Positions 1 to 55,920 of a stretch of 64,000 nucleotides of DNA are shown here, piece by piece. The stretch covers positions 186,001 through 250,000 of the IMG/VR virus record IMGVR_UViG_3300036770_007539; one strand, given 5' to 3'. Position numbers and translations under genes: made by a program. Each line of letters opens with the position of its first letter. Position 1 is the stretch's first letter. Under the pieces are notes generated by a model. The model was given only the letters and a program-made list of their open reading frames with translations. It searched no databases and was not told the origin of the DNA.

Positions 1-1
1 T

Positions 2-1489: not shown

Positions 1490-1510
1490 TCTGCTGTTAT
1501 AGAAAGGCTC

Positions 1511-2605
1511 ATGCGAGTTAAAGTACAAGGATTTTTATTTGGTAAGTCTCATAGCTGGGCATATGTTAATCAAAATTTAGGCAGATCCTTGCTTAAATTG
1601 GGGCATGATGTAGAGTTCGTTTCCACAGATGGCAATGACCCCAAGCATACCCCAAATGATTTAAAACCGTTTATTAAATCATTTGGAATTGGCAATTATG
1701 ATATGCAAATATCTTATACTGCTATGATTAATTTTCCTCAATATTTATCTTCTGGAGATAAAAATAGATTTGGAATATGGTGCTATGAATTTCCAATTAT
1801 TCCAAAAGACTTTATTAAATATTATAAAAGCTGCGATAAAATTCTAGCTCCCAGTAATTTTGCCAAAGATATTTTTATTAATAATAAAGTTCCAGGAGAT
1901 AGTGTTGTAGTCGTTCCTCATGGTATTGATTTAGATGCATTTAATAATAAAAATAAATTTAAATTAAAAACCAATAAAAAAATAAAATTTTTAATTCCAT
2001 TAGGTCAGCCTCATATCAGAAAAGCAATCCCTGAAACCATTGAATCGTTCTATAAAGCATTTACAAATAAAGATGATGTTTGTTTGGTTGCAAAAATACC
2101 AAGTTCTTCTAAAGAAGAGTCCAAGCCTTTCGAGGTTGATGTTAAAAAAATAATTAATAAATTAAATGAAAAATATAGACAGCATCCAGAAATAGAATTA
2201 ATTACTGATTATGTTCCTGATATGGTTTCTTTATTTAATGCTTGCGATGTAGTATATTCATTGACACATGCTGAATGTTTTTTCATGCCAGCACTTGAGG
2301 GTTTTGCTGCTAACAAGTTGGTTGTTGTTCCAGGTCATGGTGGTCAATTAGATTTTTGCAATAATGAAAATAGCTTGCTGATTTCTGGAAAAGAAGTTAG
2401 GGCTCCAATGGAAGCTCAGTATTGGTCCCCATCTCCATTTAATTCTTATTTTGAAGCAAATCAAGAGCACGCAGTAGAAGCATTAAGAAGTGTTTACCGC
2501 TCTTATGATTCTATTTTAGAATCTAAAAAAGAATCTATGAAAAATACGGTTCAAAATTATACTTGGGATAATGCTATTAATTTAATCTTGAAAGAAGTTG
2601 TTTGA
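1511..2605 (+). CDS. Glycosyltransferase family 4 (GT-B)
   Basis: VVPHGID, RKAI, ECFFMPALEG (EGFGLPxLEA-like) motifs. Confidence 0.9.
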   Translation: MRVKVQGFLFGKSHSWAYVNQNLGRSLLKLGHDVEFVSTDGNDPKHTPNDLKPFIKSFGIGNYDMQISYTAMINFPQYLSSGDKNRFGIWCYEFPIIPKDFIKYYKSCDKILAPSNFAKDIFINNKVPGDSVVVVPHGIDLDAFNNKNKFKLKTNKKIKFLIPLGQPHIRKAIPETIESFYKAFTNKDDVCLVAKIPSSSKEESKPFEVDVKKIINKLNEKYRQHPEIELITDYVPDMVSLFNACDVVYSLTHAECFFMPALEGFAANKLVVVPGHGGQLDFCNNENSLLISGKEVRAPMEAQYWSPSPFNSYFEANQEHAVEALRSVYRSYDSILESKKESMKNTVQNYTWDNAINLILKEVV

Positions 2606-3288
2606 TGTTGGTAAGTATTATAATACCTGTATTTAATCAAGTTTCTTTTACTCAGAAATGTATAAAAGACTTATTACAATTAAAAGTAGAAAATGAAATT
2701 ATAGTTATTGATAATAATAGCACAGATGGAACTGATTCTTTTTTTTCAAGTTTAAGCAGTAAAAATTTAAAATATTTAAAATTAAACAGTAATGTTGGAT
2801 TTGGAGCAGCTAATAATATAGGCGTGGAAAATTCTTCTGGTAAAAATTTATTATTTTTAAATAATGATGTTTGTGTTTTAAAAGATAAAGACAGTTGGAT
2901 TGATCCATTATTAAATCTTTGCCAAGATAGATTGTTGTCTTCTCAGTCAGGGTTGTTAGATTTTAATTTTAATTTTGTTAAAGAAGTATCTGACCCTCAT
3001 GTTTTAAAAAATTCTTTTGAGTATTTAAGTGGTTGGTCTTTGTTGGGATCTAGGGAGTTATTTAATCAAATCTCTCAAGAGGAAGGCGTGATATGGTCAA
3101 AAAAATATTTTGCATATTTTGAAGATGCTCATCTTAGCTGGAAGGCAAGAGATTTAAAAATACCAATGGAAGTAGTTAAAACTCCACTTCATCATTTTGG
3201 AAGAATTACTTCGAGTAAAATGGGTCTATCTAAAATGTATCAAGATTCTTATAAGATTTTTTCTAATTATTGGAAAAGTAAAAAATGA
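2602..3288 (+). CDS. Glycosyltransferase family 2
   Basis: VSIIIPVFN, IDNNSTDGT, GFGAANN, LNND, YFED. Confidence 0.9.
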   Translation: MMLVSIIIPVFNQVSFTQKCIKDLLQLKVENEIIVIDNNSTDGTDSFFSSLSSKNLKYLKLNSNVGFGAANNIGVENSSGKNLLFLNNDVCVLKDKDSWIDPLLNLCQDRLLSSQSGLLDFNFNFVKEVSDPHVLKNSFEYLSGWSLLGSRELFNQISQEEGVIWSKKYFAYFEDAHLSWKARDLKIPMEVVKTPLHHFGRITSSKMGLSKMYQDSYKIFSNYWKSKK

Positions 3289-4094
3289 AATTGCACATAT
3301 TAACTTTAACATGGAATGGCTCTTTTCTATTACAAAGATTAGCTCCAGGACTATTAAACAATGTAAAACATGCAAATATTGATTATCATTGGTATGTCCG
3401 CAGTAATGGATGCAAAGATGATTCTATTGATTATCTAAATTCTTTAGAAGAAAAAATTTCTATCTTAAAAAAAGATCATAATAGAGAAAATTTTTCTCAA
3501 GGAGTAAATTCTCTAGCAAATTTAGCCAGAGACAACATTTCAGATGGAGACCTGTTTTTGTTATTAAACAATGACATCTCTTTTAAAGATCCTTTTTCAT
3601 TAAAAAATGTTATTGATTTATATTTAAAATATAATCCTGGAATAGTAGGAGCTAAGTTAAATTATACGAATTCAAATAAGCTTCAACATGCTGGGGTTAT
3701 TTTTTCTACTAAGTATGGCAACATGCCTTGGCATTTTCGAGCAGGCGAAGAAGAGGATGAAGAATCTAAAAAGAATAGATATTTTCAAGCTGTTACTGCT
3801 GCTTTTATGATAACTCCATGCAAATTATTTTTTGAAGCGGGCATGCTGGATGAAAAATTCAATTGGGCATTTGAAGATATTGCTTATAACTTAAAAATTT
3901 CTAATATGGGTCATAAAATAATTTATTGTGGTAATACTCATATAGATCATGGAGAGTCAGTTTCTTTAAAAAAGAATCCAGTAAATAAACTCATGATAGA
4001 CTCAAATGTAAAACATTTTAAAAATAATTATGGGAATCTTTATAAGATAGATCATGATTTGTATTTGAATAATAAAAATTATGGACTAATATGA
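3285..4094 (+). CDS. Glycosyltransferase family 2
   Basis: LLLNND, LQHAGV, AVTAAF, FED, HGES motifs. Confidence 0.88.
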   Translation: MKLHILTLTWNGSFLLQRLAPGLLNNVKHANIDYHWYVRSNGCKDDSIDYLNSLEEKISILKKDHNRENFSQGVNSLANLARDNISDGDLFLLLNNDISFKDPFSLKNVIDLYLKYNPGIVGAKLNYTNSNKLQHAGVIFSTKYGNMPWHFRAGEEEDEESKKNRYFQAVTAAFMITPCKLFFEAGMLDEKFNWAFEDIAYNLKISNMGHKIIYCGNTHIDHGESVSLKKNPVNKLMIDSNVKHFKNNYGNLYKIDHDLYLNNKNYGLI

Positions 4095-5068
4095 AAACTT
4101 TATGCTTGCCCTACTGCCCTGGTATTCCTTGGAATATTAATGACCAAGAAGTTATTGTTAGGAAATTAAATGGAGACCCGCAAGCACTGTTAACAAAAGA
4201 TTTAAATATCGTATGTCATGGTGGCTTACTAGAATCTTTTATTTCAACATTTGCTATAGAATATTTAAAATATAAACATCCATATAAAAAAATTATTTGG
4301 CACGGGAGTCAAGAATTTAAGCACGTAATTGATTATCAAGGAATAGCTACTTATTCAAATGAAATTACTTCTGAAGTGGCTAATTCTTATCCTATACATT
4401 TCTTTAAAGACAAAGAGAACAATACTTATTTTAATTTATTAGATAATTATTTGGATTATCATACTTATCTTGGGAAAAAGATTAAAAAAAATAAAATGAA
4501 CTTCATTGATACTTTTAACAAGAATTTTATGTTGGAAAATTTAATGAAGCATAAACTGCAGTGTAGAAATAAGCCAGAAGATTTAGAATTTATATCTTGG
4601 TGTAATTTAAATAAAAACATATTAAATAAGCCCTATGTTGTCATTCTCCCAGACAGACTGACTACATCTATGCATCATCTAGATTTTATGAATTTTTCTA
4701 TGATGGAATTAAGAGGACTTACATCAGTATTGAATTCTAAGGGGATTCAAGTTATTATTATGTCTAACGATCCCTCTAAGTATTATGGAAATTTTAAGTT
4801 TATAAAATATTCTTTTGCAAGGTTTTTATCTTTGGCAGTAAATTCTAAGATTGTTTTGTCAAGACAGCCCGACTTTTCATTAATAGCATTAATGATTTCT
4901 AGAGCAAATGTATATTCTTATATGATTCGACACATGCCAAAAATCAAATTAAAGCCATCTATTCGAAGAATAAAAGGCAGAATAGATCCAGATTGGAAGT
5001 ATCTAAAGAGACAAAATACTATTCCTTTATTAATAGAAGACATTACTAGGAGAATTTATGAGCGCTAA
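4091..5068 (+). CDS. Hypothetical protein, possibly divergent GT9/heptosyltransferase-like fold
   Basis: Weak resemblance (HGGLLES, KYKHP, PYVVILP) and position in a GT operon. Confidence 0.35.
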   Translation: MKTLCLPYCPGIPWNINDQEVIVRKLNGDPQALLTKDLNIVCHGGLLESFISTFAIEYLKYKHPYKKIIWHGSQEFKHVIDYQGIATYSNEITSEVANSYPIHFFKDKENNTYFNLLDNYLDYHTYLGKKIKKNKMNFIDTFNKNFMLENLMKHKLQCRNKPEDLEFISWCNLNKNILNKPYVVILPDRLTTSMHHLDFMNFSMMELRGLTSVLNSKGIQVIIMSNDPSKYYGNFKFIKYSFARFLSLAVNSKIVLSRQPDFSLIALMISRANVYSYMIRHMPKIKLKPSIRRIKGRIDPDWKYLKRQNTIPLLIEDITRRIYER

Positions 5069-5837
5069 ATTATTAATGGTAACTTATAATAGGTTGGAAT
5101 TAACCAAGAAAACTTTAGATAATATTTTCAAAGTTACTAACTTTCCATTTGAATTGGTTATTGTTGACAATGCTTCTTCTGATGAAACGGTATCATACTT
5201 AAAAGAAATTCTTCCTAATAAATCTTTGAATGATAATTATATTGGAGCCAAGTTATTATGCAACTCAAATAACTTGGGAATAGCCATAGGTAGAAATCAG
5301 ACAATGCTATTAGCTGGTAATTCTGATTGGTACGCAACCCTAGATAATGACGTTCTCCTCCCAGAAGGATGGCTAAAAAAATGCATAGATATAATGACTT
5401 TAAATGCTAAGTATGGTATGATTGGAGTTAATTTTGAAAGCGTTAAGTATCCATTAGTAGATGTTGGACCATATAAAGTTCAGCACAAGAAAGAGGGAAA
5501 CTTAGGAACTGCTTGCATGGTTTTTTCTAAAAAAGTTCATAAAATGATTGGATTCTTTAATGATAAAGATTATGGAAAGTATGGGCTAGAGGATAGTGAT
5601 TATGGATTTAGGACAAGAGTTGCAGGGTTTCAATTGGGATATTTGGAAGATGAAGGTGTTCATTTAGGAGAAGATTCGGCAGATAAAGGCGAATATAGAA
5701 AGTTTAAAACTGAAGAACATAATAAATATTTGCAAAAATTTTATGGTAACTGTAAATTATATTATAATAACTCAAAACCCATCTATTTAAAAATAGACAA
5801 AGAAAAATATCAATTAGATAATATTTTAGAGTTTTAA
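5058..5837 (+). CDS. Glycosyltransferase family 2
   Basis: VTYNR, VDNASSDET, GIAIGRN, LDND, GLEDSDY. Confidence 0.9.
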   Translation: MSAKLLMVTYNRLELTKKTLDNIFKVTNFPFELVIVDNASSDETVSYLKEILPNKSLNDNYIGAKLLCNSNNLGIAIGRNQTMLLAGNSDWYATLDNDVLLPEGWLKKCIDIMTLNAKYGMIGVNFESVKYPLVDVGPYKVQHKKEGNLGTACMVFSKKVHKMIGFFNDKDYGKYGLEDSDYGFRTRVAGFQLGYLEDEGVHLGEDSADKGEYRKFKTEEHNKYLQKFYGNCKLYYNNSKPIYLKIDKEKYQLDNILEF

Positions 5838-8527
5838 TGATATCTGAATATTTTTATGAAGATTTGAAATTCGTATGTGCCTCTGCCGTATCTTGTAAAT
5901 ATAATAAAGAATATATATTAGAGCCTAGATACGGCAAGGTTAATTTCAATTTTATTGAAAAATTTACTTATATAAATTTATTCTTTAAAAGAATTTCTGG
6001 AAATGGAAAAATATTAATTAATAATGTTCCATATGTTATTTCTTCTAAAAGTTCTGATGTGAAAAGCATTTCAGCCAATGATGGCAATATTTTTATATCC
6101 AGACCCATTGATTCTATTGGCGAAGTGGCAATTTTTGGTATAGAACTATATTTGCAAGAAGGAAGTGATATAATGAATTGGAAGTCTTTAGTTAAGAAGT
6201 TGTCTGATTATCGTGGGCTATCATTAATAAATAATGAATTGCTGGCAAAAGAAAATGCTTATATTAGCCCAGCCAGCAGAGTAACTGATATTGTGACTTT
6301 GCCAGAAAATGTTTCGGTTGTTAAAGATGATAAAATTTATTTTAAATATCCTTGTAAAATTTTGCAACTAACATTACAGGATGATCAAGCTTCTAATTCA
6401 AATATTAATATTTTTCCGCCAAGAGAATCTCCAAGTCCTTCAGTTATAAACTTTAATAAAACTGATGATTTAACTTTAAATAGTCAGCAAAACAATATTC
6501 AAGTTATGAATTTTAAATCAACAAACAATCAAAATAATAAAGAAAAAGATCAAATTCTTCGCATCGTTTATGACTCATCGGCTAGTGGTGTAATTAATTC
6601 AAATACTATTAAAAATAATGAAAAATTATTAAAGTTCTCTCATGTTAATGAGAAGAATTATATTTTTATTAAAGCAGGGGGAACGCTGACCCTTCCCTTA
6701 TCGAGCATTGATCATGGAAAAAAATATATTTTAATAATTAATGCCAAGAAGGTTAGTGGTAACGGAAAGGCTCAGATAACTACTTCTTTAGATCAGCATT
6801 TTGATTTTGTTGTATCTAATTCATTTCAAGATAAAAATTTTAATTTTAGTTCTTTTAATTTATCTAAAGAGTATGACATATTTAAATTATCAATTTCTAT
6901 GCCTAATACTTCTTTCGGAGAAATTGTTATTTCTAGAATCATGATTTTAGAAGACTTTAATCAGGACAACCTAACTCTTTTAAATAGCGCTCACAGCCCT
7001 GGCAAGCAAACATATGCTCTTCAAAACAGTTCATATAATAAATTAAATAAAAATAAAAAATTTGTTATTGTTATTCCTAGTTATAAAAATCAAGAATGGG
7101 CAGAGAAAAACATTTTATCGGCATTAAATCAAAATTATTCAGATTTTAGAGTTCTTTTTACTGATGATTGCTCTCCTGATAATACTTTTGATGTTGTAAA
7201 AAAAGCTGCAGAAAATCATCCAAATAAAAATAAATCTGTTATTGTAAAAAATGAAGTTCGTAAAGGGGCTTTAGAAAATCTCTATAATATGATTCATTCC
7301 TGTGATGACGATGAAATTATATTAACATTGGACGGTGATGACTGGCTAGCAAGTCCAGAAGTATTAAATATTTTAAATAGTCATTATTCTGATGATATAT
7401 GGATGACTTATGGTCAGTATCAAAATTATCCAGATGGAGGAAGGGGAATTGCCCAACTAATACCAGACCAAGTTATAAAAAATAAAACTTATAGAAGCCA
7501 TACTTGGTGTTCTTCTCACTTAAGAACTTTTTATGCTTGGCTATTTAAAGAAATTAAAAAAGAAGATTTATTTTATGAAGGCAGGTTTATGGCAATGACC
7601 TGGGACATGGCTATGATGTTTCCAATGTTAGAAATGTCTGGTCACAGATCTAGATTTATAAGCGATTATTTATACATATATAATTTAGTAAATCCAATCA
7701 ACGATCATAAAGTTAATCAAAAATTACAACAAAAGCTAGATAGGCTGGTTAGAAACATGCCTAAATATTCTCTTCTCAACAGAGAGCCATCGCATGTATT
7801 GGAGAACAGAATTAAAAATAAAAATAAAATAGGATTATTAATAATTGCAACCGGCAAGTACGACCAATTTATTTCTCAATTAGTTGAATCTGCTGACAAG
7901 TATTATTTTAATGATTCAAGATTTGATGTAACGTATTTTATTTTTACTGATAAGCAAGTTTCATTAAATACTTTAAGAAATTATAAAGTAATTAATATAC
8001 AGCATCGAGGATTCCCCTATGCTAGTATGGACAGGTTCAAACATTTTACAAATAATTCTGAAGAATTATCTAAAATGGATTATTTATATTATGTAGACGT
8101 TGATTGTAAGTTTGTAGATCACGTCTCTGCTGAGACCTTGGGAGAATTAGTTGGGGTTCGTCATTGTGGTTATTTTAATGGCGGTGGCACGTTTGAAGAA
8201 AATAAAAATTCTGTATTTTATGAAAATCCCCAAAAATATAAATATTATTTTGGAGGAGGATTCAGCGGAGGAAAAGCCTCTTCTTATTTAGAATTGTCAA
8301 AATGGTGTTATGAAATGATAGAAAGAGATTTATCAAATAATATAATTCCAACCTGGCATGATGAAACAGCTTTAAATAGATACTTCTTAGATCACGAGCC
8401 TGAAATTGTATTAACTCCCAGCTATCACTATCCAGAAAATTATTCAAATTATATTGCAAAATGGAGACCCCATAAATTTACTCCTAAAATTATGCTCTTA
8501 GAAAAAAATCATAAGGAAGTAAGATGA
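5837..8527 (+). CDS. Multidomain glycosyltransferase: duplicated N-terminal beta-rich domain + GT2 + GT6 (ABO-type alpha-1,3-Gal/GalNAc transferase)
   Basis: GT2 part: IVIPSY, DDCSPD, LDGDDW. GT6 part: IGLLIIATGKY, YFIFTD, DVD, YYFGGGFSGG, WHDETALNRYF, LTPSY, LEKNH. Confidence 0.88.
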   Translation: MISEYFYEDLKFVCASAVSCKYNKEYILEPRYGKVNFNFIEKFTYINLFFKRISGNGKILINNVPYVISSKSSDVKSISANDGNIFISRPIDSIGEVAIFGIELYLQEGSDIMNWKSLVKKLSDYRGLSLINNELLAKENAYISPASRVTDIVTLPENVSVVKDDKIYFKYPCKILQLTLQDDQASNSNINIFPPRESPSPSVINFNKTDDLTLNSQQNNIQVMNFKSTNNQNNKEKDQILRIVYDSSASGVINSNTIKNNEKLLKFSHVNEKNYIFIKAGGTLTLPLSSIDHGKKYILIINAKKVSGNGKAQITTSLDQHFDFVVSNSFQDKNFNFSSFNLSKEYDIFKLSISMPNTSFGEIVISRIMILEDFNQDNLTLLNSAHSPGKQTYALQNSSYNKLNKNKKFVIVIPSYKNQEWAEKNILSALNQNYSDFRVLFTDDCSPDNTFDVVKKAAENHPNKNKSVIVKNEVRKGALENLYNMIHSCDDDEIILTLDGDDWLASPEVLNILNSHYSDDIWMTYGQYQNYPDGGRGIAQLIPDQVIKNKTYRSHTWCSSHLRTFYAWLFKEIKKEDLFYEGRFMAMTWDMAMMFPMLEMSGHRSRFISDYLYIYNLVNPINDHKVNQKLQQKLDRLVRNMPKYSLLNREPSHVLENRIKNKNKIGLLIIATGKYDQFISQLVESADKYYFNDSRFDVTYFIFTDKQVSLNTLRNYKVINIQHRGFPYASMDRFKHFTNNSEELSKMDYLYYVDVDCKFVDHVSAETLGELVGVRHCGYFNGGGTFEENKNSVFYENPQKYKYYFGGGFSGGKASSYLELSKWCYEMIERDLSNNIIPTWHDETALNRYFLDHEPEIVLTPSYHYPENYSNYIAKWRPHKFTPKIMLLEKNHKEVR

Positions 8528-9243
8528 TTACTTTCAGTCAGCTTGGTCAGTGGGGAAGACTAGGCAATCAATTATTTGAAGTAGCAACTACTGTCGGATT
8601 AGCCTTAAGAGTTAAAGAATCTTATGGATTTCCTGAATGGGAATATTCAAAGCATTGTAACTTACAGAACTGTTATTATGATAATTTAAAAATTACAAAC
8701 ATATATCATGAACCATTTTTTCATTATAAAAAAATAGACAATAAAAATAATAACTTAGATCTAAGAGGGTATTTTCAAAGCTACAAGTATTTTGATGATT
8801 ATAAATATTTTATTTTAGATGCTTTAGTTCCCAATTTAAATTTAAATCCAGAATCTGATTTATGTGGGATTCATGTTAGAAAGGGAGATTATATAAATTT
8901 AAAAGATTGCTATCAACAACTAGACATGAATTATTATAATCAAGCTATAGAAGAAATAAAATCTGATAGATATATTATATTCTCAGATGACATTGAATGG
9001 TGTAAAAAAAATTTTATTGGTGATAAATTTCAATTTTCTCAGGGCAGAGAGCCACATGAAGATTTAGCAATTATGGCAAAACAGTGTGATAATATGATTA
9101 TTGCAAATTCTTCGTTTTCATGGTGGGGAGCTTATTTAAATACAAATTTTAACAAAAAAATTATTGCGCCTAAAAAATGGTTTGGTCCAAAATTACCGCA
9201 TGATACCAGTGATTTATTGCCAAAAGAATGGATTGTTATATGA
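8524..9243 (+). CDS. Alpha-1,2-fucosyltransferase (GT11)
   Basis: GRLGNQLF, GYFQS, HVRKGDY, FSDD, ANSSFSWWGAYL are the GT11 signatures. Confidence 0.93.
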   Translation: MITFSQLGQWGRLGNQLFEVATTVGLALRVKESYGFPEWEYSKHCNLQNCYYDNLKITNIYHEPFFHYKKIDNKNNNLDLRGYFQSYKYFDDYKYFILDALVPNLNLNPESDLCGIHVRKGDYINLKDCYQQLDMNYYNQAIEEIKSDRYIIFSDDIEWCKKNFIGDKFQFSQGREPHEDLAIMAKQCDNMIIANSSFSWWGAYLNTNFNKKIIAPKKWFGPKLPHDTSDLLPKEWIVI

Positions 9244-10202
9244 TAAACTTGCACGTTTTAAAGTATGAGTCGCAAAATTTAGGCGATGATATTCAGAGTG
9301 TAGCTGTTATGGATATTTTAAATGACCTTAATATAAAATATTCATTGGTATCTCGCGACTCACTAGATAAATATCCATTTAGTGAAAATGAAAAAAATTA
9401 TGTCATTTTAAATGGGTGGTTTACTAATGGTTATGGCGTGGATGAATATTACTCTGTTCCAAGGGAATTTAGAGCAAATAAACATGTAAATTTACCGCCT
9501 AAAGGTAATTTTTTGCCAATCATTTATTCTTTTCATATTTCTGAGTGGGGTCCCTTTTATGACCGTGAAGTTCATCCAAGCTTTTTAAGCGAAGAGAGTG
9601 CAAATTTCTATAGAAAATCATTATCTGTAGGTTGCAGGGACGTGCATACATTAGAATTAATGAAAAAAATTAATGTAGATACTTCTTATTTTTCCGGATG
9701 CATCACTCTTTCTTTAAATAAAGAAAAATATTATTTAAAAAATAATCAAGATGATTATATATTATTTGTAGACGTTCCAAAGGAACATGAAAATGTTTTA
9801 GAGCAAAAGACTAAAGAGGTTTTTAAAGATTTAGAAATTATAAAGATGACTCATAATTTAGACTCGTCTTTTACTGATGAAAATTCAAGATTTGATAAAG
9901 CAAAATTACATTTAAAAAAATTCTGTAATGCAAAACTCGTAATTACAACAAGGCTTCATGTCTTTTTGCCCTGCTTAGCTTTTGGAGCGCCTGTAATATT
10001 TGTATTTGACGATGAAGAATTAAATAATTCCAGAGTTAGAGATTATATTAAAATGGTTAATACCATACCTTTTAGTCAGATAAAATCTATTAATTTAAAC
10101 GATTATTTAAAAAATAAATATGATGGAGAGATGTCAGTAAAAATTACAAACAAATTCAAAGAAATAATCAATGAGGTTATTAATGATACATCAGACGCAT
10201 AA
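9240..10202 (+). CDS. Polysaccharide pyruvyl transferase family protein
   Basis: NLGDDIQS, VGCRD, TTRLH; ATG at 9240 overlaps the upstream stop (ATGA). Confidence 0.82.
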   Translation: MINLHVLKYESQNLGDDIQSVAVMDILNDLNIKYSLVSRDSLDKYPFSENEKNYVILNGWFTNGYGVDEYYSVPREFRANKHVNLPPKGNFLPIIYSFHISEWGPFYDREVHPSFLSEESANFYRKSLSVGCRDVHTLELMKKINVDTSYFSGCITLSLNKEKYYLKNNQDDYILFVDVPKEHENVLEQKTKEVFKDLEIIKMTHNLDSSFTDENSRFDKAKLHLKKFCNAKLVITTRLHVFLPCLAFGAPVIFVFDDEELNNSRVRDYIKMVNTIPFSQIKSINLNDYLKNKYDGEMSVKITNKFKEIINEVINDTSDA

Positions 10203-10746
10203 TACTACTAAGATGGATAGGTATCCTAAAATTTTTAATTTTTTATCTGAAAATTATCAAGACTCATTAAAAATTCTATCTTTTGGCTGCTCTTCGGGAG
10301 AAGAATGCTTCTCTTTGAGAAAATACTTTTTAAAATCTAAAATATTTGGGGTAGATGCTAATGATGAAATATTAAAAGAAGCCATTAAAAATAATAATGA
10401 CAATAATATTTATTTTGACAACAGCATAATGAACATTGAATCTGTTGATATGATTTTTGCAATGTCGGTATTTTGTAAGCATCCAGAATCATTTGATTTA
10501 TTAAAAAATACTGTTTATAATTTTAAAGATTATAATGAAGAAGTTAAAAAGCTAGATAGTAAATTAAATAAAAATGGTATTTTTATAAACTATAATTCAA
10601 ATTATTTTTTTTCAGATACCGACGTTTATTATAAATATTCTCCGATTTTGGGAGATTTTGAAAAGGAATTTGTTAAAAAATTTGATAAAAATAAAAATTA
10701 TTCAAATTTAGAATCACCCGTCATTTTTATAAAAAATAAAGTTTGA
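10171..10746 (+). CDS. Class I SAM-dependent methyltransferase (CheR-like motif I)
   Basis: ILSFGCSSGEE, FGVD. Confidence 0.75.
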   Translation: MRLLMIHQTHNTTKMDRYPKIFNFLSENYQDSLKILSFGCSSGEECFSLRKYFLKSKIFGVDANDEILKEAIKNNNDNNIYFDNSIMNIESVDMIFAMSVFCKHPESFDLLKNTVYNFKDYNEEVKKLDSKLNKNGIFINYNSNYFFSDTDVYYKYSPILGDFEKEFVKKFDKNKNYSNLESPVIFIKNKV

Positions 10747-10771
10747 TATAGGTAAATTTTATTGGAGACAT

Positions 10772-11698
10772 ATGAAGCCTGAAAAAATTATTTTATGGGG
10801 ATACCCTCTTCACTCTCATACACATTCTTACATTCATTATGCTTTTAAGCGAGCCTTTGATTATTTGGGATGTGAAACTTATTGGTTTACTGACAAAGAT
10901 GATGTTTCTGGATTTAATTTTAATAACTGTTTATTTATTACTGGCGGAGATCAAGAACAAAATATTCCTTTAAATAAAAGCAGTCGCTATGTGATTCATA
11001 ATGTAAATGCAAAAAAATATTTAGACCAAAATTGTAAGATATTTTTAATACAGACTCATACTAAAGATGCTCCACTAGATACAAATCCTAATTCTCATAG
11101 AATTAATCCTTGGAGTCTATTACATACGGATAATGATATAAAATGTTTATATATGGCATGGGCAACGGACTTACTGCCAAATGAAATTAATTTAAACAAT
11201 GCAACGAATCAAAATCATAATAGAGAATGTGTTTGGGTCGGGACTTCTGGGGGCGGCAATTCTAAATTTGAAAATGGAAGTGCTCTCTATCCTTATTTTG
11301 AAGAATGTAAAAAAAACAATATTATTGTAAATAATATTGATCCCTGGGCTACTCCTGTCTCGCCAGAAAAAAATTTATTATTAGTTAAAAATTCATTTGT
11401 ATCCCCATCGATACAAGGACCTTGGCAAGTAGAGAGCCAATACATTCCCTGCAGAATATTTAAAAATATTTCTTATGGTCATTTTGGAATTACTAATAAT
11501 TCTTATGTGAATCGTATTTTTAATAATCAATTAATATATGATTCTAATTCTACTACGCTGTTCTATAAATCATTGGAGGCTAAGCAAAGCTCCGGGGCAG
11601 TTGATTATATAAAATCTTTAATGCAAGAAGTTAAAAATAATCATACATACATAAATAGAATACAAGTTTTATTTGATTGCATGGGGCTTGAATTATGA
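10772..11698 (+). CDS. Putative glycosyltransferase-like protein (GT-B C-terminal-like motifs)
   Basis: YIPCRIFKNISYG and HTYINRI resemble CgeB/GT1_2-type motifs; GGAG RBS. Confidence 0.5.
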   Translation: MKPEKIILWGYPLHSHTHSYIHYAFKRAFDYLGCETYWFTDKDDVSGFNFNNCLFITGGDQEQNIPLNKSSRYVIHNVNAKKYLDQNCKIFLIQTHTKDAPLDTNPNSHRINPWSLLHTDNDIKCLYMAWATDLLPNEINLNNATNQNHNRECVWVGTSGGGNSKFENGSALYPYFEECKKNNIIVNNIDPWATPVSPEKNLLLVKNSFVSPSIQGPWQVESQYIPCRIFKNISYGHFGITNNSYVNRIFNNQLIYDSNSTTLFYKSLEAKQSSGAVDYIKSLMQEVKNNHTYINRIQVLFDCMGLEL

Positions 11699-12666
11699 AC
11701 GTTTTACATGTTACGTTCCATCAGGGCTGTAAAATAAATCTAGATTATGTTGCTCAAAGTTTAGGTTTTAATCTTACAACTCAAAGAGCTGATTGGAATT
11801 ATAACATAGGCTCAAATAGAGCAAATGAAATTTGGAATAAGTATAAAGACTATTATAATTCATTTGATGCAATAGTTACATCTGACACAGCTCCGCTATC
11901 AAGAATATTTTTACAAAATAATTATAGTAAAAAATTAATTGTATGGGTTTGTAATAGATTCGATTATTGTGATATGTCAACAAATGACTGTGCTTTTCCA
12001 GACCAATCATATTATCAATTAATAAGAGATTCAATAAATAAAAATAATGTAAAATTTTTTTCTTATACTAAATTTGAGCATGAATACGCTCAAAAATATA
12101 GAGGTATAAACTGGGGCAATGAAACAATTAAACCATGCGCATTTTATGATGACACTCCTCCAGTTAATTTTGCTTTAAGTGGAATTGATAAAGAATCTAC
12201 ATTTTTTATTCCCCCATATCATAATGATACTATTTTTATGAATTTAAAATCTAAATGCGATCAGTTAGGGATAAGAGCTTATGCTGGGAGATACAATGGT
12301 CCATTAGATTTAATGAATATTAAAGGAATTATTCACATACCATATGCTTGGTCTAATTTGGCTCTATTTGAAAATTGGTCAATGGGAAATGTTTATTTTG
12401 TTCCTTCTAAAGATTTTCTAATTAATTTAGCACATCAAAATAATTTTTTCTGGAGCCCGCCTTTTCCATTGGACCATATCGAATCGTCCGAATGGTACCT
12501 CCCAGAGCATAAAGATCTTTTTATTTATTTTAATGATTGGAATCATTTAAAAACTTTAAGTAATGATAACGATTTAATAAATTCAAAAAAAACGAAAGTT
12601 TTAAATTATAGCAAAATTCACACGAATGAAATGTTAAATAAATGGAAAAAAGCACTTGACCTATAA
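11695..12666 (+). CDS. Hypothetical protein in glycan locus (possible glycosyltransferase)
   Basis: ORF with ATGA overlap; HIPYAWSNLALFE resembles a GT-B C-terminal motif. Confidence 0.45.
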   Translation: MNVLHVTFHQGCKINLDYVAQSLGFNLTTQRADWNYNIGSNRANEIWNKYKDYYNSFDAIVTSDTAPLSRIFLQNNYSKKLIVWVCNRFDYCDMSTNDCAFPDQSYYQLIRDSINKNNVKFFSYTKFEHEYAQKYRGINWGNETIKPCAFYDDTPPVNFALSGIDKESTFFIPPYHNDTIFMNLKSKCDQLGIRAYAGRYNGPLDLMNIKGIIHIPYAWSNLALFENWSMGNVYFVPSKDFLINLAHQNNFFWSPPFPLDHIESSEWYLPEHKDLFIYFNDWNHLKTLSNDNDLINSKKTKVLNYSKIHTNEMLNKWKKALDL

Positions 12667-12674
12667 GGAATAAA

Positions 12675-13889
12675 ATGATTCAAGGATTTTATACTGGATG
12701 TATAAATTCAGGAAATATTGGAGACGATGTTTTATTTAATATTTTTTTAAATTTATTAAGCGAATGCATTGTTGATAAATATAAAGTTAATTGCTCAATA
12801 GATCAAAATCAATTATTTCTAAAAGATTCTTCTAAAGAATGGATGGAAAACTCTTCTATTGGTGTAGTTGGAGGAGGGTCAATTCTTCATCCAGAAGAAA
12901 TTTCTTATTCAGGTCCTATTAAAAACTATGAATCAAATATTAAAGCATCTTTATTATTTGGAACTGGAATATCAGATACGCCAAATTTTAAAATATCAGA
13001 AAGTGATAAGTTAAATATATTGTCCGGAAAGTATTTAAATTTAAATTTTCCAATAAATAAAATGATGAGTGAAAACATTTTAATTGCTAAAAATATAAAA
13101 TTTGGCGGGCTACGAGGACCATTAGACGTGGCTGTATGTAGAAGTTTTGATGAAACTTTTCGTAAGCCATGGATTTATGATCCGGGACTGTTATTTAATA
13201 GATATTATAATTTAAATTCTTTAAAAAATAAAAATTCTAATATTATTGGAATAAATATTGCCAACATATCTGGAGATAATAGAATTTCATTAAAAAATGA
13301 AAAATACATTGATTATATGAACAGGTTGGAGTCTGTTATTGTAGATGTATGTAATTTTTTAATTAATAAAAATTATAAAATATATTTTTACTCAATGTCC
13401 GATGGTGAAATGCATTTGCATAATACTATTATTAATAAACTGGATAAGAATTTAATAGGATCAAATATATTAACTCACAATAAACCTTTAAATTATGTTG
13501 AATTGGCTTTGTTATCTTCTACTTTTAAATTCGCCATAGCAACTAGACTGCACGCCAATATTTTATTAAATTCTAATTTAATTCCTACCATAAATTTAAT
13601 GTATAATATTAAAGCAAGTAATTATATGAAAAGTATAGAAATGCTTGAACTGGGGGTTCCAACAGATTCTAATATGAATTTAAATAATATAATTAATAAA
13701 TATAATTTTTTAATGCAAAATTACGATAATATTATTAAAACATTAAAGTTTAATGTTGAAAAAGCGTATACGTTGCACTATGATGAAATAATGAAATTAT
13801 TAGATGGTATTAATTTAAAAATAGAAAATGATGTAAATATACAATATCAGATATATAATAGTATATTAGGTTTTTTTAAAATTAATTAA
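12675..13889 (+). CDS. Polysaccharide pyruvyl transferase family protein
   Basis: GNIGDD, VGGGS, LRGP, DPG, TRLHANI. Confidence 0.82.
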   Translation: MIQGFYTGCINSGNIGDDVLFNIFLNLLSECIVDKYKVNCSIDQNQLFLKDSSKEWMENSSIGVVGGGSILHPEEISYSGPIKNYESNIKASLLFGTGISDTPNFKISESDKLNILSGKYLNLNFPINKMMSENILIAKNIKFGGLRGPLDVAVCRSFDETFRKPWIYDPGLLFNRYYNLNSLKNKNSNIIGINIANISGDNRISLKNEKYIDYMNRLESVIVDVCNFLINKNYKIYFYSMSDGEMHLHNTIINKLDKNLIGSNILTHNKPLNYVELALLSSTFKFAIATRLHANILLNSNLIPTINLMYNIKASNYMKSIEMLELGVPTDSNMNLNNIINKYNFLMQNYDNIIKTLKFNVEKAYTLHYDEIMKLLDGINLKIENDVNIQYQIYNSILGFFKIN

Positions 13890-13898
13890 AGGCAAAAA

Positions 13899-14531
13899 AT
13901 GAAAGAGTATAGTTTTGAAGGCGCACAAGATTGGCATCATTATTTTAAAATTATTTTTGATAATTTCAAAGTAAGAAATATGTTAGAGTTTGGTCTTGGC
14001 AATGGTACTGAATTTTTATTAGATCATTGTAACACCGTTACTTCTGTTGAAATTTCATTGGGCGATTATAACAAATCCTGGTATTCTATGTGTTTAAAAA
14101 AATATTCTCATTATAATAATTGGAATCCAATATATATTGAAGCTTGTGATGAAATTAGAGAAGCTAATGAAATCGCTCAAAAGAATAGATATCCGATATC
14201 ATATAATAAACATTTATCTAAATTAGAAGAAATTACAGATCTTGTTTTATCAGATCATGAATATGATGCTATTTTTGTTGATGCTGGAATTCATAATAGA
14301 GGCGATATTTTAAATTTAGTAATGGGCAAAGCTCCTATAATTGCAGCACATGATTCCTCTAGGGATGAAAATAGAATACTTAAAAATATATACGGATACA
14401 ATATTGTTCGAGTTCCGAGTGATTATTTAGAATTTCATTTTGAAGATACGTATATGGGTACTACGATTTGGGTTAAAAAAGATTTTAACAGCAATGTTAT
14501 TAGTTCTTTGTCAGGAAGATTAAACAAATGA
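13899..14531 (+). CDS. SAM-dependent methyltransferase
   Basis: MLEFGLGNGT, VTSVE, YDAIFVDA, AHD. Confidence 0.75.
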   Translation: MKEYSFEGAQDWHHYFKIIFDNFKVRNMLEFGLGNGTEFLLDHCNTVTSVEISLGDYNKSWYSMCLKKYSHYNNWNPIYIEACDEIREANEIAQKNRYPISYNKHLSKLEEITDLVLSDHEYDAIFVDAGIHNRGDILNLVMGKAPIIAAHDSSRDENRILKNIYGYNIVRVPSDYLEFHFEDTYMGTTIWVKKDFNSNVISSLSGRLNK

Positions 14532-15223: not shown

Positions 15224-15224
15224 A

Positions 15225-16133: not shown

Positions 16134-16138
16134 AAATT

Positions 16139-18668: not shown

Positions 18669-18690
18669 GATATAATAACCTAAGGATTAT

Positions 18691-50592: not shown

Positions 50593-50597
50593 AAGAC

Positions 50598-52324: not shown

Positions 52325-52325
52325 C

Positions 52326-54907: not shown

Positions 54908-54928
54908 GTCATTATGTTTTATTATTGA

Positions 54929-55654: not shown

Positions 55655-55667
55655 ATTTTTCTCAATC

Positions 55668-55919: not shown

Positions 55920-55920
55920 T

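What the first reader, a model, noticed from the sequence alone, without database searches (positions are those of the whole stretch)
7829..9243. Adjacent GT6 + GT11 genes could make a histo-blood-group A-like epitope
Seen: a GT6 domain translationally coupled (ATGA) to an alpha-1,2-fucosyltransferase, with Gmd and a 4-epimerase in the same locus. The GT6 has a DVD motif like the metal-dependent vertebrate ABO enzymes (most bacterial GT6s have NxN). YYFGGGFSGG puts Gly-Gly-Gly at the positions equivalent to ABO 266-268 (LGG in A-transferase, MGA in B-transferase). Known: GT11 makes Fuc-alpha1,2-Gal (H antigen) and GT6 adds alpha1,3-GalNAc or Gal to it; small residues at 266/268 admit UDP-GalNAc. 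GT6/GT11 genes are known from a cyanophage, so the pair has precedent but its function there is not settled. Inference: an A-antigen-like or Forssman-like cap on the phage glycan.
Basis: partly seen in the sequence, partly recalled or inferred. Interest (0 to 1): 0.78.

Follow-up and report, generated by a model that had tools for sequence, protein, structure and literature searches.

The report
Huge-phage blood-group-A-like glycan enzymes
A very large bacterial virus from a subsurface metagenome carries a fused GT2-GT6 enzyme followed by a fucosyltransferase that together probably build a sugar cap like the human blood-group A antigen. The enzyme families are known, but the fused form and its conservation across huge phages and environmental chlamydiae are new, and what the cap is attached to is unknown.

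Summary
A GT6 domain (Pfam 2e-39) with a DVD motif and Gly-Gly-Gly at the ABO 266-268 positions ends in an ATGA overlap with a GT11 gene (1e-28). Gmd and a GalE-type 4-epimerase lie 7 kb downstream.

Three corrections:
- The GT6 is the C-terminal third of an 896-aa protein: two CBM-like beta-sandwiches, then GT2, then GT6.
- DxD is the rule in this branch (131 of 134 nearest cluster representatives). It was already described for the phage/Parachlamydia clade, so it is not unusual.
- No GDP-fucose synthase (Fcl) is found in the 301 kb held, although related phages have adjacent Gmd-Fcl pairs.

New context: the window belongs to a jumbo phage from a subsurface metagenome, estimated at about 420 kb. 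More than 190 GT2-GT6 fusion proteins exist in metagenomes, many on 420-480 kb contigs. The trio GT2 + GT11 + GT6 recurs in three gene orders in phages and in environmental Chlamydiota.

The acceptor and donor residues resemble those of GalNAc transferases that need Fuc-alpha1,2-Gal (BoGT6a, GTA, PaGT6). An A-like cap, GalNAc-alpha1,3(Fuc-alpha1,2)Gal, is the best reading (about 0.55). A Forssman-like cap is disfavoured. Whether the carrier is the virion or the host envelope is open. I rate this a new variant of a known kind, of moderate interest.

The parts
5837..8527 (+). 896-aa three-part glycosyltransferase: N-terminal CBM-like region, GT2 domain, GT6 domain
   Evidence: One ORF. Homologues align over 97-100% of its length at 40-64% identity. 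Pfam GT2 and GT6 hits.
5837..7036 (+). N-terminal region (residues 1-400): two beta-sandwich, carbohydrate-binding-module-like domains joined by a disordered Asn/Ser/Gln-rich linker (about 181-240)
   Evidence: No Pfam or PDB sequence match. AF2 model has pLDDT 82 and is all-beta. Foldseek hits are to tandem CBM51, CBM22, CBM6 and CBM4_9 proteins at E 1e-7 to 1e-11, but TM is only 0.2-0.27. Atlas feature hits are CBM_4_9 and CBM_6. This supports the fold class only.
7055..7786 (+). GT2 domain (residues about 407-650), an inverting GT-A enzyme with an intact DGDD motif. Proposed to make the beta-linked acceptor sugar.
   Evidence: PF00535 3.2e-16. Invariant D37/D38 and D93-G-D95-D96 in 34 homologues. 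Sugar specificity is unknown; the best PDB match is only TarS at 8e-7.
7796..8524 (+). GT6 domain (residues 654-896), a retaining alpha-1,3-GalNAc/Gal transferase fold. Key residues: DVD 754-756, His776, Gly778, GGG 806-808, Glu843, Leu887, Lys890, Arg896.
   Evidence: PF03414 2.2e-39. phmmer gives BoGT6a 2e-38 and human ABO 4e-33. The model superposes on BoGT6a 4ayj with TM 0.89 and rmsd 1.9 A. The key residues are invariant or nearly so in 120 fusion homologues.
8524..9243 (+). GT11 fucosyltransferase, 239 aa. Its start overlaps the GT6 stop (ATGA), with an AAGGAAG Shine-Dalgarno-like run upstream.
   Evidence: PF01531 1e-28. Motifs GRLGNQ, HVRKGD (H117, R119, D122 invariant), SDD and NSSFSWW are conserved in 120 homologues. 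phrog_2644 2e-54.
15225..16133 (+). GalE-type UDP-hexose 4-epimerase (302 aa), a possible source of UDP-Gal and/or UDP-GalNAc
   Evidence: Best solved match is T. maritima UDP-glucose 4-epimerase 4zrm at 2.4e-77. Its TIGR01179 score is below the cut-off. Whether it takes acetylated or plain substrates was not resolved.
16139..17140 (+). GDP-mannose 4,6-dehydratase (Gmd), the first step to GDP-fucose
   Evidence: TIGR01472 7.6e-118, 393.6 bits (cut-off 415); PF16363 8e-112.
17137..18096 (+). RmlB-like dTDP-glucose 4,6-dehydratase. It occupies the slot where related phages carry Fcl.
   Evidence: TIGR01181 356.5 bits (cut-off 365.1). PDB dTDP-glucose 4,6-dehydratases at 1e-74. Synteny with G004 and G001.
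1511..5837 (+). Upstream part of the glycan operon: GT4 (1511-2605), GT2 (2602-3288), two unknown ORFs (3285-4094, 4091-5068), GT2 (5058-5837)
   Evidence: Pfam. No predicted TM helices.
9228..15223 (+). Downstream part of the operon: pyruvyl transferase (9228-10202), methyltransferase (10171-10746), unknown ORFs, pyruvyl-transferase-like (12675-13889), methyltransferase (14528-15223)
   Evidence: Pfam.
54929..55654 (-). Sugar-1-phosphate nucleotidyltransferase (241 aa), a possible supplier of an NDP-sugar precursor
   Evidence: PF00483 1.6e-43.
1..1489 (+). C-terminal part of a 973-aa dockerin-domain protein. It follows the baseplate J gene and a 2225-aa LamG/ConA-like protein, so the glycan operon starts right after the tail/baseplate module.

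Best explanation
The window belongs to a jumbo tailed phage from a subsurface metagenome: 301 kb are held and the estimated full size is about 420 kb. Inside an 18-kb operon of soluble glycan-building enzymes, three transferase activities form one module.

1. The GT2 domain of the 896-aa protein (inverting) puts on a beta-linked hexose, probably Gal. This step is inferred.
2. The GT11 enzyme, encoded next and overlapping by ATGA, adds L-fucose alpha-1,2 to it from GDP-fucose. This is inferred from family and motifs.
3. The GT6 domain of the same 896-aa protein (retaining, metal-dependent through DVD) adds alpha-1,3-GalNAc from UDP-GalNAc to the fucosylated Gal.

The product would be a blood-group-A-like trisaccharide cap, GalNAc-alpha1,3(Fuc-alpha1,2)Gal-beta-R. 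The two N-terminal CBM-like beta-sandwiches probably hold the enzyme on its glycan or glycoprotein substrate. Gmd, the GalE-like epimerase and a nucleotidyltransferase feed the donors. The last step to GDP-fucose (Fcl) must come from the host or from the unsequenced part of the genome.

What is shown: domain identities, motifs, fold, conserved gene neighbourhood and fusion. What is inferred: sugars, linkages and order of action. What is unknown: the carrier of the glycan (virion protein or host envelope polymer).
For: Family and fold:
- GT6 HMM 2.2e-39 and GT11 1e-28.
- The GT6 model superposes on BoGT6a (TM 0.89, rmsd 1.9 A) and on human GTA/GTB (TM 0.72-0.76).

Donor:
- R691/G778/G806/G808 sit at the GTA/GTB-discriminating positions (PMC4202792).
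- GGG is invariant or nearly so in 120 fusion homologues.
- BoGT6a, a proven GalNAc transferase, has AGG at the same place (PMC3961637).

Acceptor:
- His776, Gly778 and Leu887 match the residues that PMC3516806 ties to 2'-fucosyl acceptors.
- PaGT6, the one assayed DXD-type prokaryotic GT6, transfers GalNAc to H trisaccharide and 2'-fucosyllactose and not to LacNAc (PMC3516806).

Functional linkage:
- GT11 lies within 1.2 kb of GT6, on the same strand, in 18 of 18 informative related loci.
- Three different gene orders occur: GT2-GT6 fusion then GT11; GT2, GT11, GT6; and, in Chlamydiota, GT6, GT2 with GT11 nearby.
- Fusion of GT2 with GT6 is seen in more than 190 proteins.

Donor supply:
- Gmd and the GalE-like epimerase lie in the operon.
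- Related phages have adjacent Gmd-Fcl pairs. In the complete 428,320-bp genome G001 they lie about 11 kb from its GT2-GT6 gene, and the Fcl's best PDB match is GDP-L-fucose synthase at 1e-94.

Precedent:
- E. coli O86 builds a B-like unit with WbnJ, WbnK and WbnI (PMC4506291, PMC4202792).
Against: - No enzyme was assayed.
- Identity to characterised GT6 enzymes is only 30-34%.
- This GT6 belongs to a sub-branch (His-Cys-Gly, GGG, Leu-Leu-x-Lys) that splits with SH-aLRT 100 from the P-SSM2/chlamydial type (His-Pro-Gly, AGG, Ala-Leu-x-Lys). No member of the sub-branch has been tested.
- Thr785, the equivalent of acceptor-binding Thr245 (GTA) and Thr134 (BoGT6a), is Pro in 81 of 120 homologues.
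- The GT11 family also holds an alpha-1,3-fucosyltransferase (PMC4202792), and the window's enzyme has Lys at the second Arg of HxRRxD.
- No Fcl is present in the 301 kb held, so the GDP-sugar available could differ.
- The sugar added by the GT2 domain is unknown.
- The epimerase's preference for acetylated substrates could not be read from the sequence.
- The predicted GT2-GT6/GT11 complex gave no answer.
Confidence: 0.55

Rival explanations
1. Same module, different donor. The GT6 domain transfers Gal (B-like, or alpha-Gal on an H acceptor) or a larger 2-substituted UDP-hexose, not GalNAc.
For: Gly at position 266 is smaller than Leu (GTA) or Ala (BoGT6a), so the pocket could be wider than GalNAc needs. 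The epimerase's substrate range is unresolved. No member of this sub-branch has been assayed.
Against: B-type and alpha-Gal enzymes carry Ala or Ser at position 268 and a larger residue at 266 (MGA, HAA). Such triads (xGA, xGS) do exist among relatives but not in this clade, where GGG is fixed. Both assayed prokaryotic enzymes that use H acceptors and carry small residues here use UDP-GalNAc (PMC3516806, PMC3961637).
Confidence: 0.2
2. The GT6 acts on a non-fucosylated acceptor (Forssman-like or alpha-Gal-like cap), and the GT11 decorates another position or uses another GDP-6-deoxyhexose, since Fcl is missing here.
For: No Fcl is present in the held genome, and an RmlB-like gene sits in the Fcl slot. 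GT11 includes a non-alpha-1,2 enzyme (PMC4202792). The Thr245 equivalent is not conserved.
Against: His776, Gly778 and Leu887 differ from the Gln/Trp/Trp of alpha3GT that exclude fucose (PMC3516806). GT11 stays next to GT6 through three gene orders and across phages and Chlamydiota. Relatives carry Gmd plus true Fcl. The genome is only 71% complete.
Confidence: 0.15
3. The glycan is attached to phage virion proteins (tail fibres or capsid) in the cytoplasm. This is a reading of the carrier, not of the enzymes.
For: None of the operon's transferases has a TM helix, and no flippase, polymerase or initiating phosphoglycosyl transferase family was detected. The operon directly follows baseplate J, a 2225-aa LamG protein and a dockerin protein on the same strand. 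The enzyme has CBM-like domains. Virion glycosylation by phage-encoded transferases is known in mycobacteriophages (cited in PMC12619734).
Against: In the relative L008 the module sits in another context. Pyruvyl transferases and methyltransferases are typical of cell-wall and capsule polymers. Cyanophage clusters with GT6/GT11 are usually read as host-surface modification (PMC12801897). There is no direct evidence either way.
Confidence: 0.35
4. The glycan remodels the host cell envelope (LPS, capsule or S-layer glycan) during infection, for example to block superinfection, using host lipid carriers and export machinery.
For: The same trio occurs in bacterial chromosomes, where it presumably serves surface glycans. 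PHROGs places both proteins under 'moron, auxiliary metabolic gene and host takeover'. Pyruvyl and methyl decorations are present.
Against: No membrane step is encoded in the operon. The host is unknown.
Confidence: 0.45

Closest known systems
Parachlamydia acanthamoebae PaGT6 and cyanophage P-SSM2 GT6 (the DXD, minimal-domain prokaryotic GT6 clade of Thiyagarajan et al. 2012, PMC3516806)
   Same: DXD motif, no C-terminal membrane-binding domain, and the C-terminal K-x-H-x-x-x-R motif. P-SSM2 also has GT11 in the same cluster. PaGT6 is a metal-dependent GalNAc transferase on H acceptors.
   Different: Here the GT6 is fused behind a GT2 domain and two CBM-like domains. It falls in a separate sub-branch (HCG/GGG/LLxK against HPG/AGG/ALxK; SH-aLRT 100). 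Identity to P-SSM2 is 34-35%. In P-SSM2, GT11 and GT6 are separated by two genes, and its GT2s are not of this subfamily.
Bacteroides ovatus BoGT6a (4AYJ/4AYL)
   Same: Best solved sequence and structure match (2e-38; TM 0.89, rmsd 1.9 A). Same His/Gly/Tyr/Trp/Glu acceptor residues, small residues at 266-268, and a YxYPE segment.
   Different: BoGT6a has NAN instead of DVD and is metal-independent. It carries a C-terminal membrane-binding region and is a single-domain protein (PMC3516806, PMC3961637). The window's protein scores below the NCBIfam cut-off for that bacterial subfamily (177.7 against 250).
Human ABO A-transferase (GTA)
   Same: DVD; Arg/Gly/Gly at positions 176/235/268; the WHDE catalytic segment; C-terminal KNH-x-x-VR.
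   Different: About 30% identity. Gly instead of Leu at 266. No stem or TM region. A 4-residue insertion before the C-terminal Lys. It is part of a multi-enzyme fusion.
E. coli O86 O-antigen enzymes WbnJ (GT2), WbnK (GT11), WbnI (GT6)
   Same: The same three CAZy families act in sequence to make a blood-group-like Fuc-alpha1,2-(hexose-alpha1,3)-Gal unit (PMC4506291, PMC4202792).
   Different: The O86 unit is built on undecaprenyl-PP with WecA, Wzx and Wzy. No such membrane components are present in the phage operon. WbnI is a Gal transferase. The three O86 transferases are described as separate proteins.
Chlorovirus PBCV-1 A064R and virus-encoded GDP-fucose/rhamnose synthesis (from my own knowledge, not checked here)
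   Same: A virus-encoded, cytoplasmic, multi-domain transferase (two GT domains plus a methyltransferase) with virus-encoded Gmd. The huge-phage clade also has a methyltransferase-GT2-GT6 form.
   Different: Eukaryotic virus, unrelated GT families, and the glycan is shown to sit on the capsid protein. Nothing of that kind is shown here.

Membership tests
CAZy GT6 / Pfam PF03414 | Significant match to the family profile above the curated cut-off | tested here: met
   135.5 bits against a cut-off of 25, E 2.2e-39, profile positions 65-312 of 313.
CAZy GT6 / Pfam PF03414 | GT-A fold superposable on solved GT6 enzymes | tested here: met
   AF2 model pLDDT 91.5. Foldseek gives BoGT6a TM 0.89 with rmsd 1.9 A, and human GTA/GTB and bovine alpha3GT TM 0.72-0.76.
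CAZy GT6 / Pfam PF03414 | Catalytic Glu (GTA E303, BoGT6a E192) in the WHDE segment, and the C-terminal Lys (plus Arg) that bind the UDP diphosphate | tested here: met
   E843, K890 and R896 align and are 120/120 conserved in fusion homologues.
CAZy GT6 / Pfam PF03414 | Retaining alpha-1,3 transfer of Gal or GalNAc | not testable with these tools
   Needs an enzyme assay.
Metal-dependent (DXD) GT6 clade of P-SSM2/PaGT6 | DXD motif in place of NXN | tested here: met
   D754-V-D756 aligns to NAN of BoGT6a and DVD of GTA. 120/120 in homologues.
Metal-dependent (DXD) GT6 clade of P-SSM2/PaGT6 | Minimal, single catalytic domain protein of about 230-250 aa | tested here: not met
   Here the GT6 is the C-terminal domain of an 896-aa protein. 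In the tree it splits from P-SSM2-type sequences with SH-aLRT 100.
NCBIfam NF041524 (bacterial 'family 6 glucosyltransferase' subfamily) | Score above the curated cut-off | tested here: not met
   177.7 bits against a cut-off of 250.
CAZy GT11 / Pfam PF01531 (alpha-1,2-fucosyltransferases) | Profile match above the cut-off | tested here: met
   100.9 bits against 23.9, E 1e-28. It is the only GT11 in the held genome.
CAZy GT11 / Pfam PF01531 (alpha-1,2-fucosyltransferases) | HxRRxD motif, whose first Arg is critical (PMC4202792) | tested here: met
   H117-V-R119-K-G-D122. His, the first Arg and Asp are 120/120 conserved. The second Arg is Lys here and in 7 other homologues, and Arg in 108.
CAZy GT11 / Pfam PF01531 (alpha-1,2-fucosyltransferases) | Alpha-1,2 linkage to Gal with GDP-fucose | not testable with these tools
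   The family also holds an alpha-1,3 enzyme (PMC4202792). An assay is needed.
De novo GDP-L-fucose pathway (Gmd + Fcl) | Gmd present | tested here: inconclusive
   393.6 bits, just under the TIGR01472 cut-off of 415, but E 7.6e-118 and a full-length match.
De novo GDP-L-fucose pathway (Gmd + Fcl) | Fcl (GDP-L-fucose synthase) present | tested here: not met
   The best match in the 301 kb is 88 bits against a cut-off of 500, and it is the RmlB-like gene. Relatives do have Fcl next to Gmd. The genome is 71% complete.
Wzx/Wzy- or ABC-dependent O-antigen/capsule gene cluster (E. coli O86 type) | Initiating phosphoglycosyl transferase, flippase/polymerase or ABC exporter in the cluster | tested here: not met
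   None of the operon's transferases (window 1511-18096) has a predicted TM segment; the only hydrophobic stretches are one in the pyruvyl transferase and one in the 191-aa ORF at 18093-18668, by a crude 19-residue Kyte-Doolittle scan. No Pfam family of that kind was found.
Carbohydrate-binding modules (CBM4_9 / CBM6 / CBM51-like jelly rolls), for the N-terminal region | Sequence or structure match to a CBM family | tested here: inconclusive
   No sequence match. Foldseek probability is 1.0 to tandem-CBM proteins, but TM is 0.2-0.27 because of the two-domain geometry. Atlas feature scores are 0.78-0.85, a lead only.

The most novel reading that the evidence does not exclude
A whole clade of 420-480 kb phages, together with environmental Chlamydiota and Dependentiae, shares a dedicated three-activity module. 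In the phages it is fused to substrate-binding domains or a methyltransferase. The module would let the virus itself decorate its own particles, for example the fibre proteins encoded just upstream, with a blood-group-A-like trisaccharide in the host cytoplasm. That would make it a bacterial-virus counterpart of the autonomous glycosylation machinery of chloroviruses and mimiviruses. It would also mark a large environmental reservoir of the DXD-type GT6 proposed as the ancestor of the vertebrate ABO genes.
Probability: 0.2. Interest if true: 0.75.

Novelty: new variant of a known kind. Interest (0 to 1): 0.5.

Why it matters
GT6 enzymes were long thought rare outside vertebrates. This search finds 2,283 clusters at 50% identity, and among the 134 nearest representatives almost all are of the metal-dependent DxD type. 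One sub-branch is fixed in huge phages as a GT2-GT6 fusion next to GT11.

If the module makes an A-like cap, several things follow:
- The 'blood-group' trisaccharide would be a common environmental glycan motif, made far from any vertebrate.
- It would give a concrete, testable case of complex glycan synthesis encoded by a bacterial virus.
- It would offer compact, soluble, naturally fused enzymes for chemo-enzymatic synthesis of H and A antigens.
- It bears on the proposed prokaryote or phage origin of the vertebrate ABO gene family.

Tried and rejected
- Megablast of the locus against GenBank phages: no match.
- PADLOC defence models on eight operon proteins: none.
- PHROGs and Pfam on six unknown operon ORFs: none.
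- Sequence-profile searches for the N-terminal 400 aa (PDB, Pfam): nothing usable. Internal repeat by BLASTP: only a short K-x-SGNGK motif, E 0.03.
- Predicted complex of GT2-GT6 with GT11: score 0.01, explicitly no answer. Not used as evidence.
- Promoter and terminator scans over 1-20000: counts within shuffle expectation, uninformative in this AT-rich DNA.
- Reading the epimerase's substrate class from the E. coli GalE Tyr299 'gatekeeper' position: the alignment is gapped there, so inconclusive.
- Assigning the GT2 domain's sugar from solved relatives: only weak matches to TarS and chondroitin synthase. The structural search of the two-domain model was swamped by GT6 hits.
- DNA hypermodification as target: considered and set aside. 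The operon has pyruvyl and methyl transferases and 6-deoxyhexose enzymes typical of polysaccharides, and the only thymidylate-synthase-family gene scores as an ordinary ThyA (339 bits). It was not tested further.
- P-SSM2's GT2 genes as counterparts of the fused GT2: no tblastn match at 1e-3.

Full report
**What the window is.** The 64-kb window is bases 186001-250000 of a 301,007-bp linear IMG/VR virus record. CheckV rates it 71% complete, which implies roughly 420 kb in full. GC content is about 30%. The window and the sequence just upstream encode typical tailed-phage genes:
- DnaB-like and other helicases and a ribonucleotide reductase;
- a virion structural protein;
- a TubZ/PhuZ-like tubulin;
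- a gp6/baseplate-J protein.

Identical DNA is found only in subsurface metagenome runs. This is an uncultured jumbo phage.

**Checking the observation.**
- ORF 5837..8527 (+) is 896 aa long. Its residues 654-896 match Pfam Glyco_transf_6 (2.2e-39) and residues 411-562 match Glycos_transf_2 (3.2e-16).
- Its TGA stop (8525-8527) overlaps the ATG (8524) of a 239-aa ORF that matches Glyco_transf_11 (1e-28).
- phmmer against all PDB chains ranks BoGT6a first (2e-38), then human ABO transferases (about 4e-33), then bovine alpha3GT (7e-25).
- In those alignments D754-V-D756 lies on the NAN of BoGT6a and the DVD of the human enzyme.
- YYFGGGFSGG aligns without a gap to human FYY-x-G-x-FFGG and to BoGT6a YYYAGGLSGG.
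- WHDE (catalytic Glu843) and the C-terminal K890-N-H-x-x-V-R896 are present.
- An AlphaFold model of the GT2-GT6 half (pLDDT 91.5) superposes on BoGT6a with TM 0.89 and rmsd 1.9 A, and on human GTA/GTB with TM 0.72-0.76.
- Gmd is at 16139..17140 (7.6e-118).
- The SDR at 15225..16133 is closest to T. maritima UDP-glucose 4-epimerase (2.4e-77).

**Corrections to the observation.**
1. The GT6 is a domain of a three-part protein, not a gene.
2. Four-base overlaps occur at eight junctions of this operon, so the ATGA is a property of the operon and not of this pair alone.
3. The third SDR (17137..18096) is an RmlB-like dTDP-glucose 4,6-dehydratase.
4. No GDP-L-fucose synthase is present in the 301 kb held. 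The best score is 88 bits against a cut-off of 500.

**The DVD motif is not unusual.** An exhaustive HMMER search of 1.84 billion cluster representatives finds 2,283 GT6 clusters at E <= 1e-3. Among the 134 nearest representatives, 131 have DxD and one has NxN. The literature already defines a clade of prokaryotic and phage GT6 enzymes with a minimal domain and a DXD motif. It includes P-SSM2, marine metagenome sequences and Parachlamydia PaGT6, and PaGT6 was shown to be metal-dependent (PMC3516806, PMC3961637). 'Most bacterial GT6s have NxN' holds for the cultured, mostly host-associated Gram-negative bacteria studied then. It does not hold for this environmental branch.

**Specificity residues.** PMC4202792 lists the four residues that separate human GTA from GTB: 176/235/266/268 = Arg/Gly/Leu/Gly against Gly/Ser/Met/Ala. 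The phage has Arg691/Gly778/Gly806/Gly808.

PMC3516806 links acceptance of a 2'-fucosylated Gal to three positions:
- A1 is His; alpha3GT has Gln.
- A2 is Gly or Ser; alpha3GT has Trp.
- A7 is Ala or Ile; alpha3GT has Trp. A7 lies three residues before the conserved Lys.

The phage has His776, Gly778 and Leu887. The pairwise alignment puts a 4-residue insertion here, so Pro883 is the alternative for A7, but neither residue is Trp. In 120 fusion homologues these residues are invariant or nearly so:

| Residue(s) | Conserved in |
|---|---|
| D754, D756, H776, G778, G807, G808, E843, K890, R896 | 120/120 |
| G806 | 117/120 |
| L887 | 119/120 |

One acceptor contact is not conserved. Thr785, the equivalent of Thr245 in GTA and Thr134 in BoGT6a, is Pro in 81 of the 120.

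Both prokaryotic GT6 enzymes assayed on H-type acceptors, BoGT6a (AGG triad) and PaGT6 (DXD type), transfer GalNAc to H-type acceptors. PaGT6 is inactive on LacNAc (PMC3516806). This supports an A-type product and argues against a Forssman-like one.

**The GT11 partner.** Among 120 homologues (236-246 aa, 48-80% identity), the motifs GRLGNQ, GYFQS, H-x-R-[RK]-x-D, SDD and NSSFSWW are conserved. The first Arg of HxRRxD is the critical one (PMC4202792) and is invariant. The second is Lys in the window's protein and in seven others. GT11 also contains an alpha-1,3-fucosyltransferase (PMC4202792), so the linkage remains an inference.

**A conserved fusion and a conserved trio.** The 896-aa protein has more than 190 homologues with GT2 and GT6 fused. 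They come in two architectures:
- unknown 400 aa + GT2 + GT6 (850-930 aa);
- methyltransferase + GT2 + GT6 (about 720-1090 aa).

The GT2-GT6 halves are 55-89% identical. Many lie on contigs of 420-480 kb, including NCBI assemblies of 419,687 and 462,167 bp and a complete 428,320-bp IMG/VR genome with terminal repeats.

In 18 of 18 related loci where the flank is present, GT11 lies on the same strand within 1.2 kb of GT6. Three gene orders exist:
- GT2-GT6 fusion followed by GT11 (the huge-phage clade);
- GT2, GT11, GT6 as separate genes (L028, L035, L037, L047);
- GT2 followed by GT11 without GT6, in many viral contigs.

In cellular genomes the same GT2 subfamily, GT6 and GT11 co-occur mainly in environmental Chlamydiota (Simkaniaceae, Parachlamydiaceae, Rhabdochlamydiaceae), Dependentiae and Verrucomicrobiota MAGs. 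There a 245-aa GT6 gene sits directly upstream of the GT2 gene, with GT11 within about 4 kb. Fusion together with neighbourhood conservation through rearrangements is good evidence that the three activities work on one product. The same three CAZy families act in sequence in E. coli O86 to make its blood-group-B-like unit: WbnJ, WbnK and WbnI (PMC4506291, PMC4202792).

**A distinct sub-branch.** In a maximum-likelihood tree of 148 GT6 domains, all fusion proteins and some standalone forms make a 43-member group. It splits with SH-aLRT 100 from the other 105, which include P-SSM2 and the standalone phage genes. The group carries His-Cys-Gly, Gly-Gly-Gly and Leu-Leu-x-Lys. The others carry His-Pro-Gly, mostly Ala/Cys-Gly-Gly, and Ala-Leu-x-Lys. 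The two N-terminal architectures interleave in the tree, so the N-terminal module has been swapped several times. No member of this sub-branch has been characterised.

**The N-terminal 400 residues.**
- There is no sequence-level family.
- An AlphaFold model (pLDDT 82) is all-beta: sandwiches at 1-106 plus 124-180 and at 243-372, joined by a disordered linker.
- Foldseek finds tandem CBM51 of a pneumococcal GH98, tandem CBM22, a Bacteroides surface glycan-binding protein, and AFDB clusters named CBM6 or CBM4_9. E-values are 1e-7 to 1e-11, but TM is only 0.2-0.27.
- Atlas feature hits point the same way at sub-threshold scores.

I read this as two carbohydrate-binding-module-like jelly rolls at the level of fold class only. 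Their ligand is unknown.

**Donor supply.** Gmd, the GalE-like epimerase and an RmlB-like dehydratase are in the operon. A sugar-1-phosphate nucleotidyltransferase is at 54929..55654 (-). Four related viral genomes, and a fifth viral genome that has the GT2-GT11 pair without GT6, carry Gmd beside or within 2 kb of an Fcl-like gene (Gmd over its cut-off in four of the five, Fcl-like in none); for the two Fcl-like genes checked, the best solved match is GDP-L-fucose synthase (1e-94 and 7.5e-55). In G004 the order is GalE-like, Gmd, Fcl. In the window it is GalE-like, Gmd, RmlB-like. So fucose is well supported for the clade. For this phage, the last step must come from the host or from the missing 29% of the genome, or the GDP-sugar differs.

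**Carrier of the glycan.** None of the operon's transferases has a predicted transmembrane helix; the only hydrophobic stretches are one in the pyruvyl transferase and one in the 191-aa ORF at 18093..18668, and no initiating transferase, flippase, polymerase or exporter family was found. The operon follows directly, on the same strand, the baseplate J gene, a 2225-aa LamG/ConA-like protein and a 973-aa dockerin-domain protein. This fits cytoplasmic glycosylation of virion proteins. It fits equally well with elongation of host lipid-linked intermediates. Pyruvyl and methyl transferases are typical of envelope polymers, and in one relative the module sits in another context. I leave the carrier open: host envelope about 0.45, virion about 0.35.

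**Comparison and novelty.**
- The GT6 and GT11 memberships are met on every sequence and structure criterion that can be tested.
- The protein does not fit the 'minimal single-domain' definition of the P-SSM2/PaGT6 clade.
- It scores below the cut-off of the NCBIfam model for the bacterial subfamily.
- GT6 plus GT11 in a phage is known from P-SSM2, and DXD-type phage GT6 is known.
- What I could not find described is the CBM-like (or methyltransferase)-GT2-GT6 fusion, its fixation in a clade of 420-480 kb phages, and the GT2/GT11/GT6 trio shared with environmental Chlamydiota.
- The main huge-phage survey does not mention glycosyltransferases in its text, and literature searches found nothing on this.

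I rate it a new variant of a known kind, interest 0.5. The source is a subsurface metagenome, so vertebrate mimicry is an unlikely purpose. 'Blood-group A-like' describes the chemistry, not the biology.

Noticed in passing
L122, L126, L127, L123, L132, L118, L120, L125 (genome-contig loci): The same GT2 subfamily, a standalone 245-aa DXD GT6 and a GT11 co-occur in chromosomes of environmental Chlamydiota (Simkaniaceae, Parachlamydiaceae, Rhabdochlamydiaceae), Dependentiae and Verrucomicrobiota MAGs. There the GT6 gene lies directly upstream of the GT2 gene. This suggests gene exchange between these bacteria and the huge-phage clade, or a hint to the host.
   Followed up: partly
L128 (contig 445,804 bp) and L129 (contig 425,589 bp): Two 'MAG' contigs labelled uncultured bacterium or Verrucomicrobiae have the size of this huge-phage clade and carry tandem copies of the GT2 (and GT11) genes. 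They may be mis-binned phage genomes.
   Followed up: no
window 17137-18096, compared with G004 107530-109433 and G001 295961-297867: In relatives, Gmd is adjacent to a true Fcl. In this phage the slot after Gmd holds an RmlB-like dTDP-glucose 4,6-dehydratase, and no Fcl is found in the 301 kb held.
   Followed up: yes
window 18691-20010: A TubZ/PhuZ-like tubulin gene (Tubulin 2e-17, TubZ-like C-terminal domain 1e-7) lies immediately after the glycan operon.
   Followed up: no
window 51494-57766 (- strand): A run of DNA-repair genes: 5'-3' exonuclease, UvdE UV-damage endonuclease (6e-47), a NUDIX protein and an Fpg-type glycosylase. A UV endonuclease is an odd find in a phage from a subsurface sample.
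   Followed up: no
genome 174636-187489 (window ..1489): Baseplate J-like protein (1076 aa), then a 2225-aa protein with a LamG/ConA-like domain, then a 973-aa protein with a dockerin type I / EF-hand-like calcium-binding domain. All lie directly upstream of the glycan operon on the same strand. A dockerin-domain protein also precedes the syntenic operon in L007.
   Followed up: partly
L016-L095 (IMG/VR loci): The GT2 subfamily with the NP[IL]NDHK motif is followed by a GT11 gene in most of 80 viral contigs even where no GT6 is present. The GT2-GT11 pair (an H-antigen-like disaccharide module?) is therefore more widespread than the trio. Half of the loci also have Gmd, Fcl or a GalE-like gene within 10 kb.
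   Followed up: partly
window 32582-36511: A 1309-aa ORF in the most GC-rich stretch of the window (0.39-0.41 against about 0.30), with no PHROG match.
   Followed up: no
window 49873-51410 (- strand): Adjacent Amidase_2 and glucosaminidase genes, probably the lysis enzymes. They imply a host with ordinary peptidoglycan.
   Followed up: no
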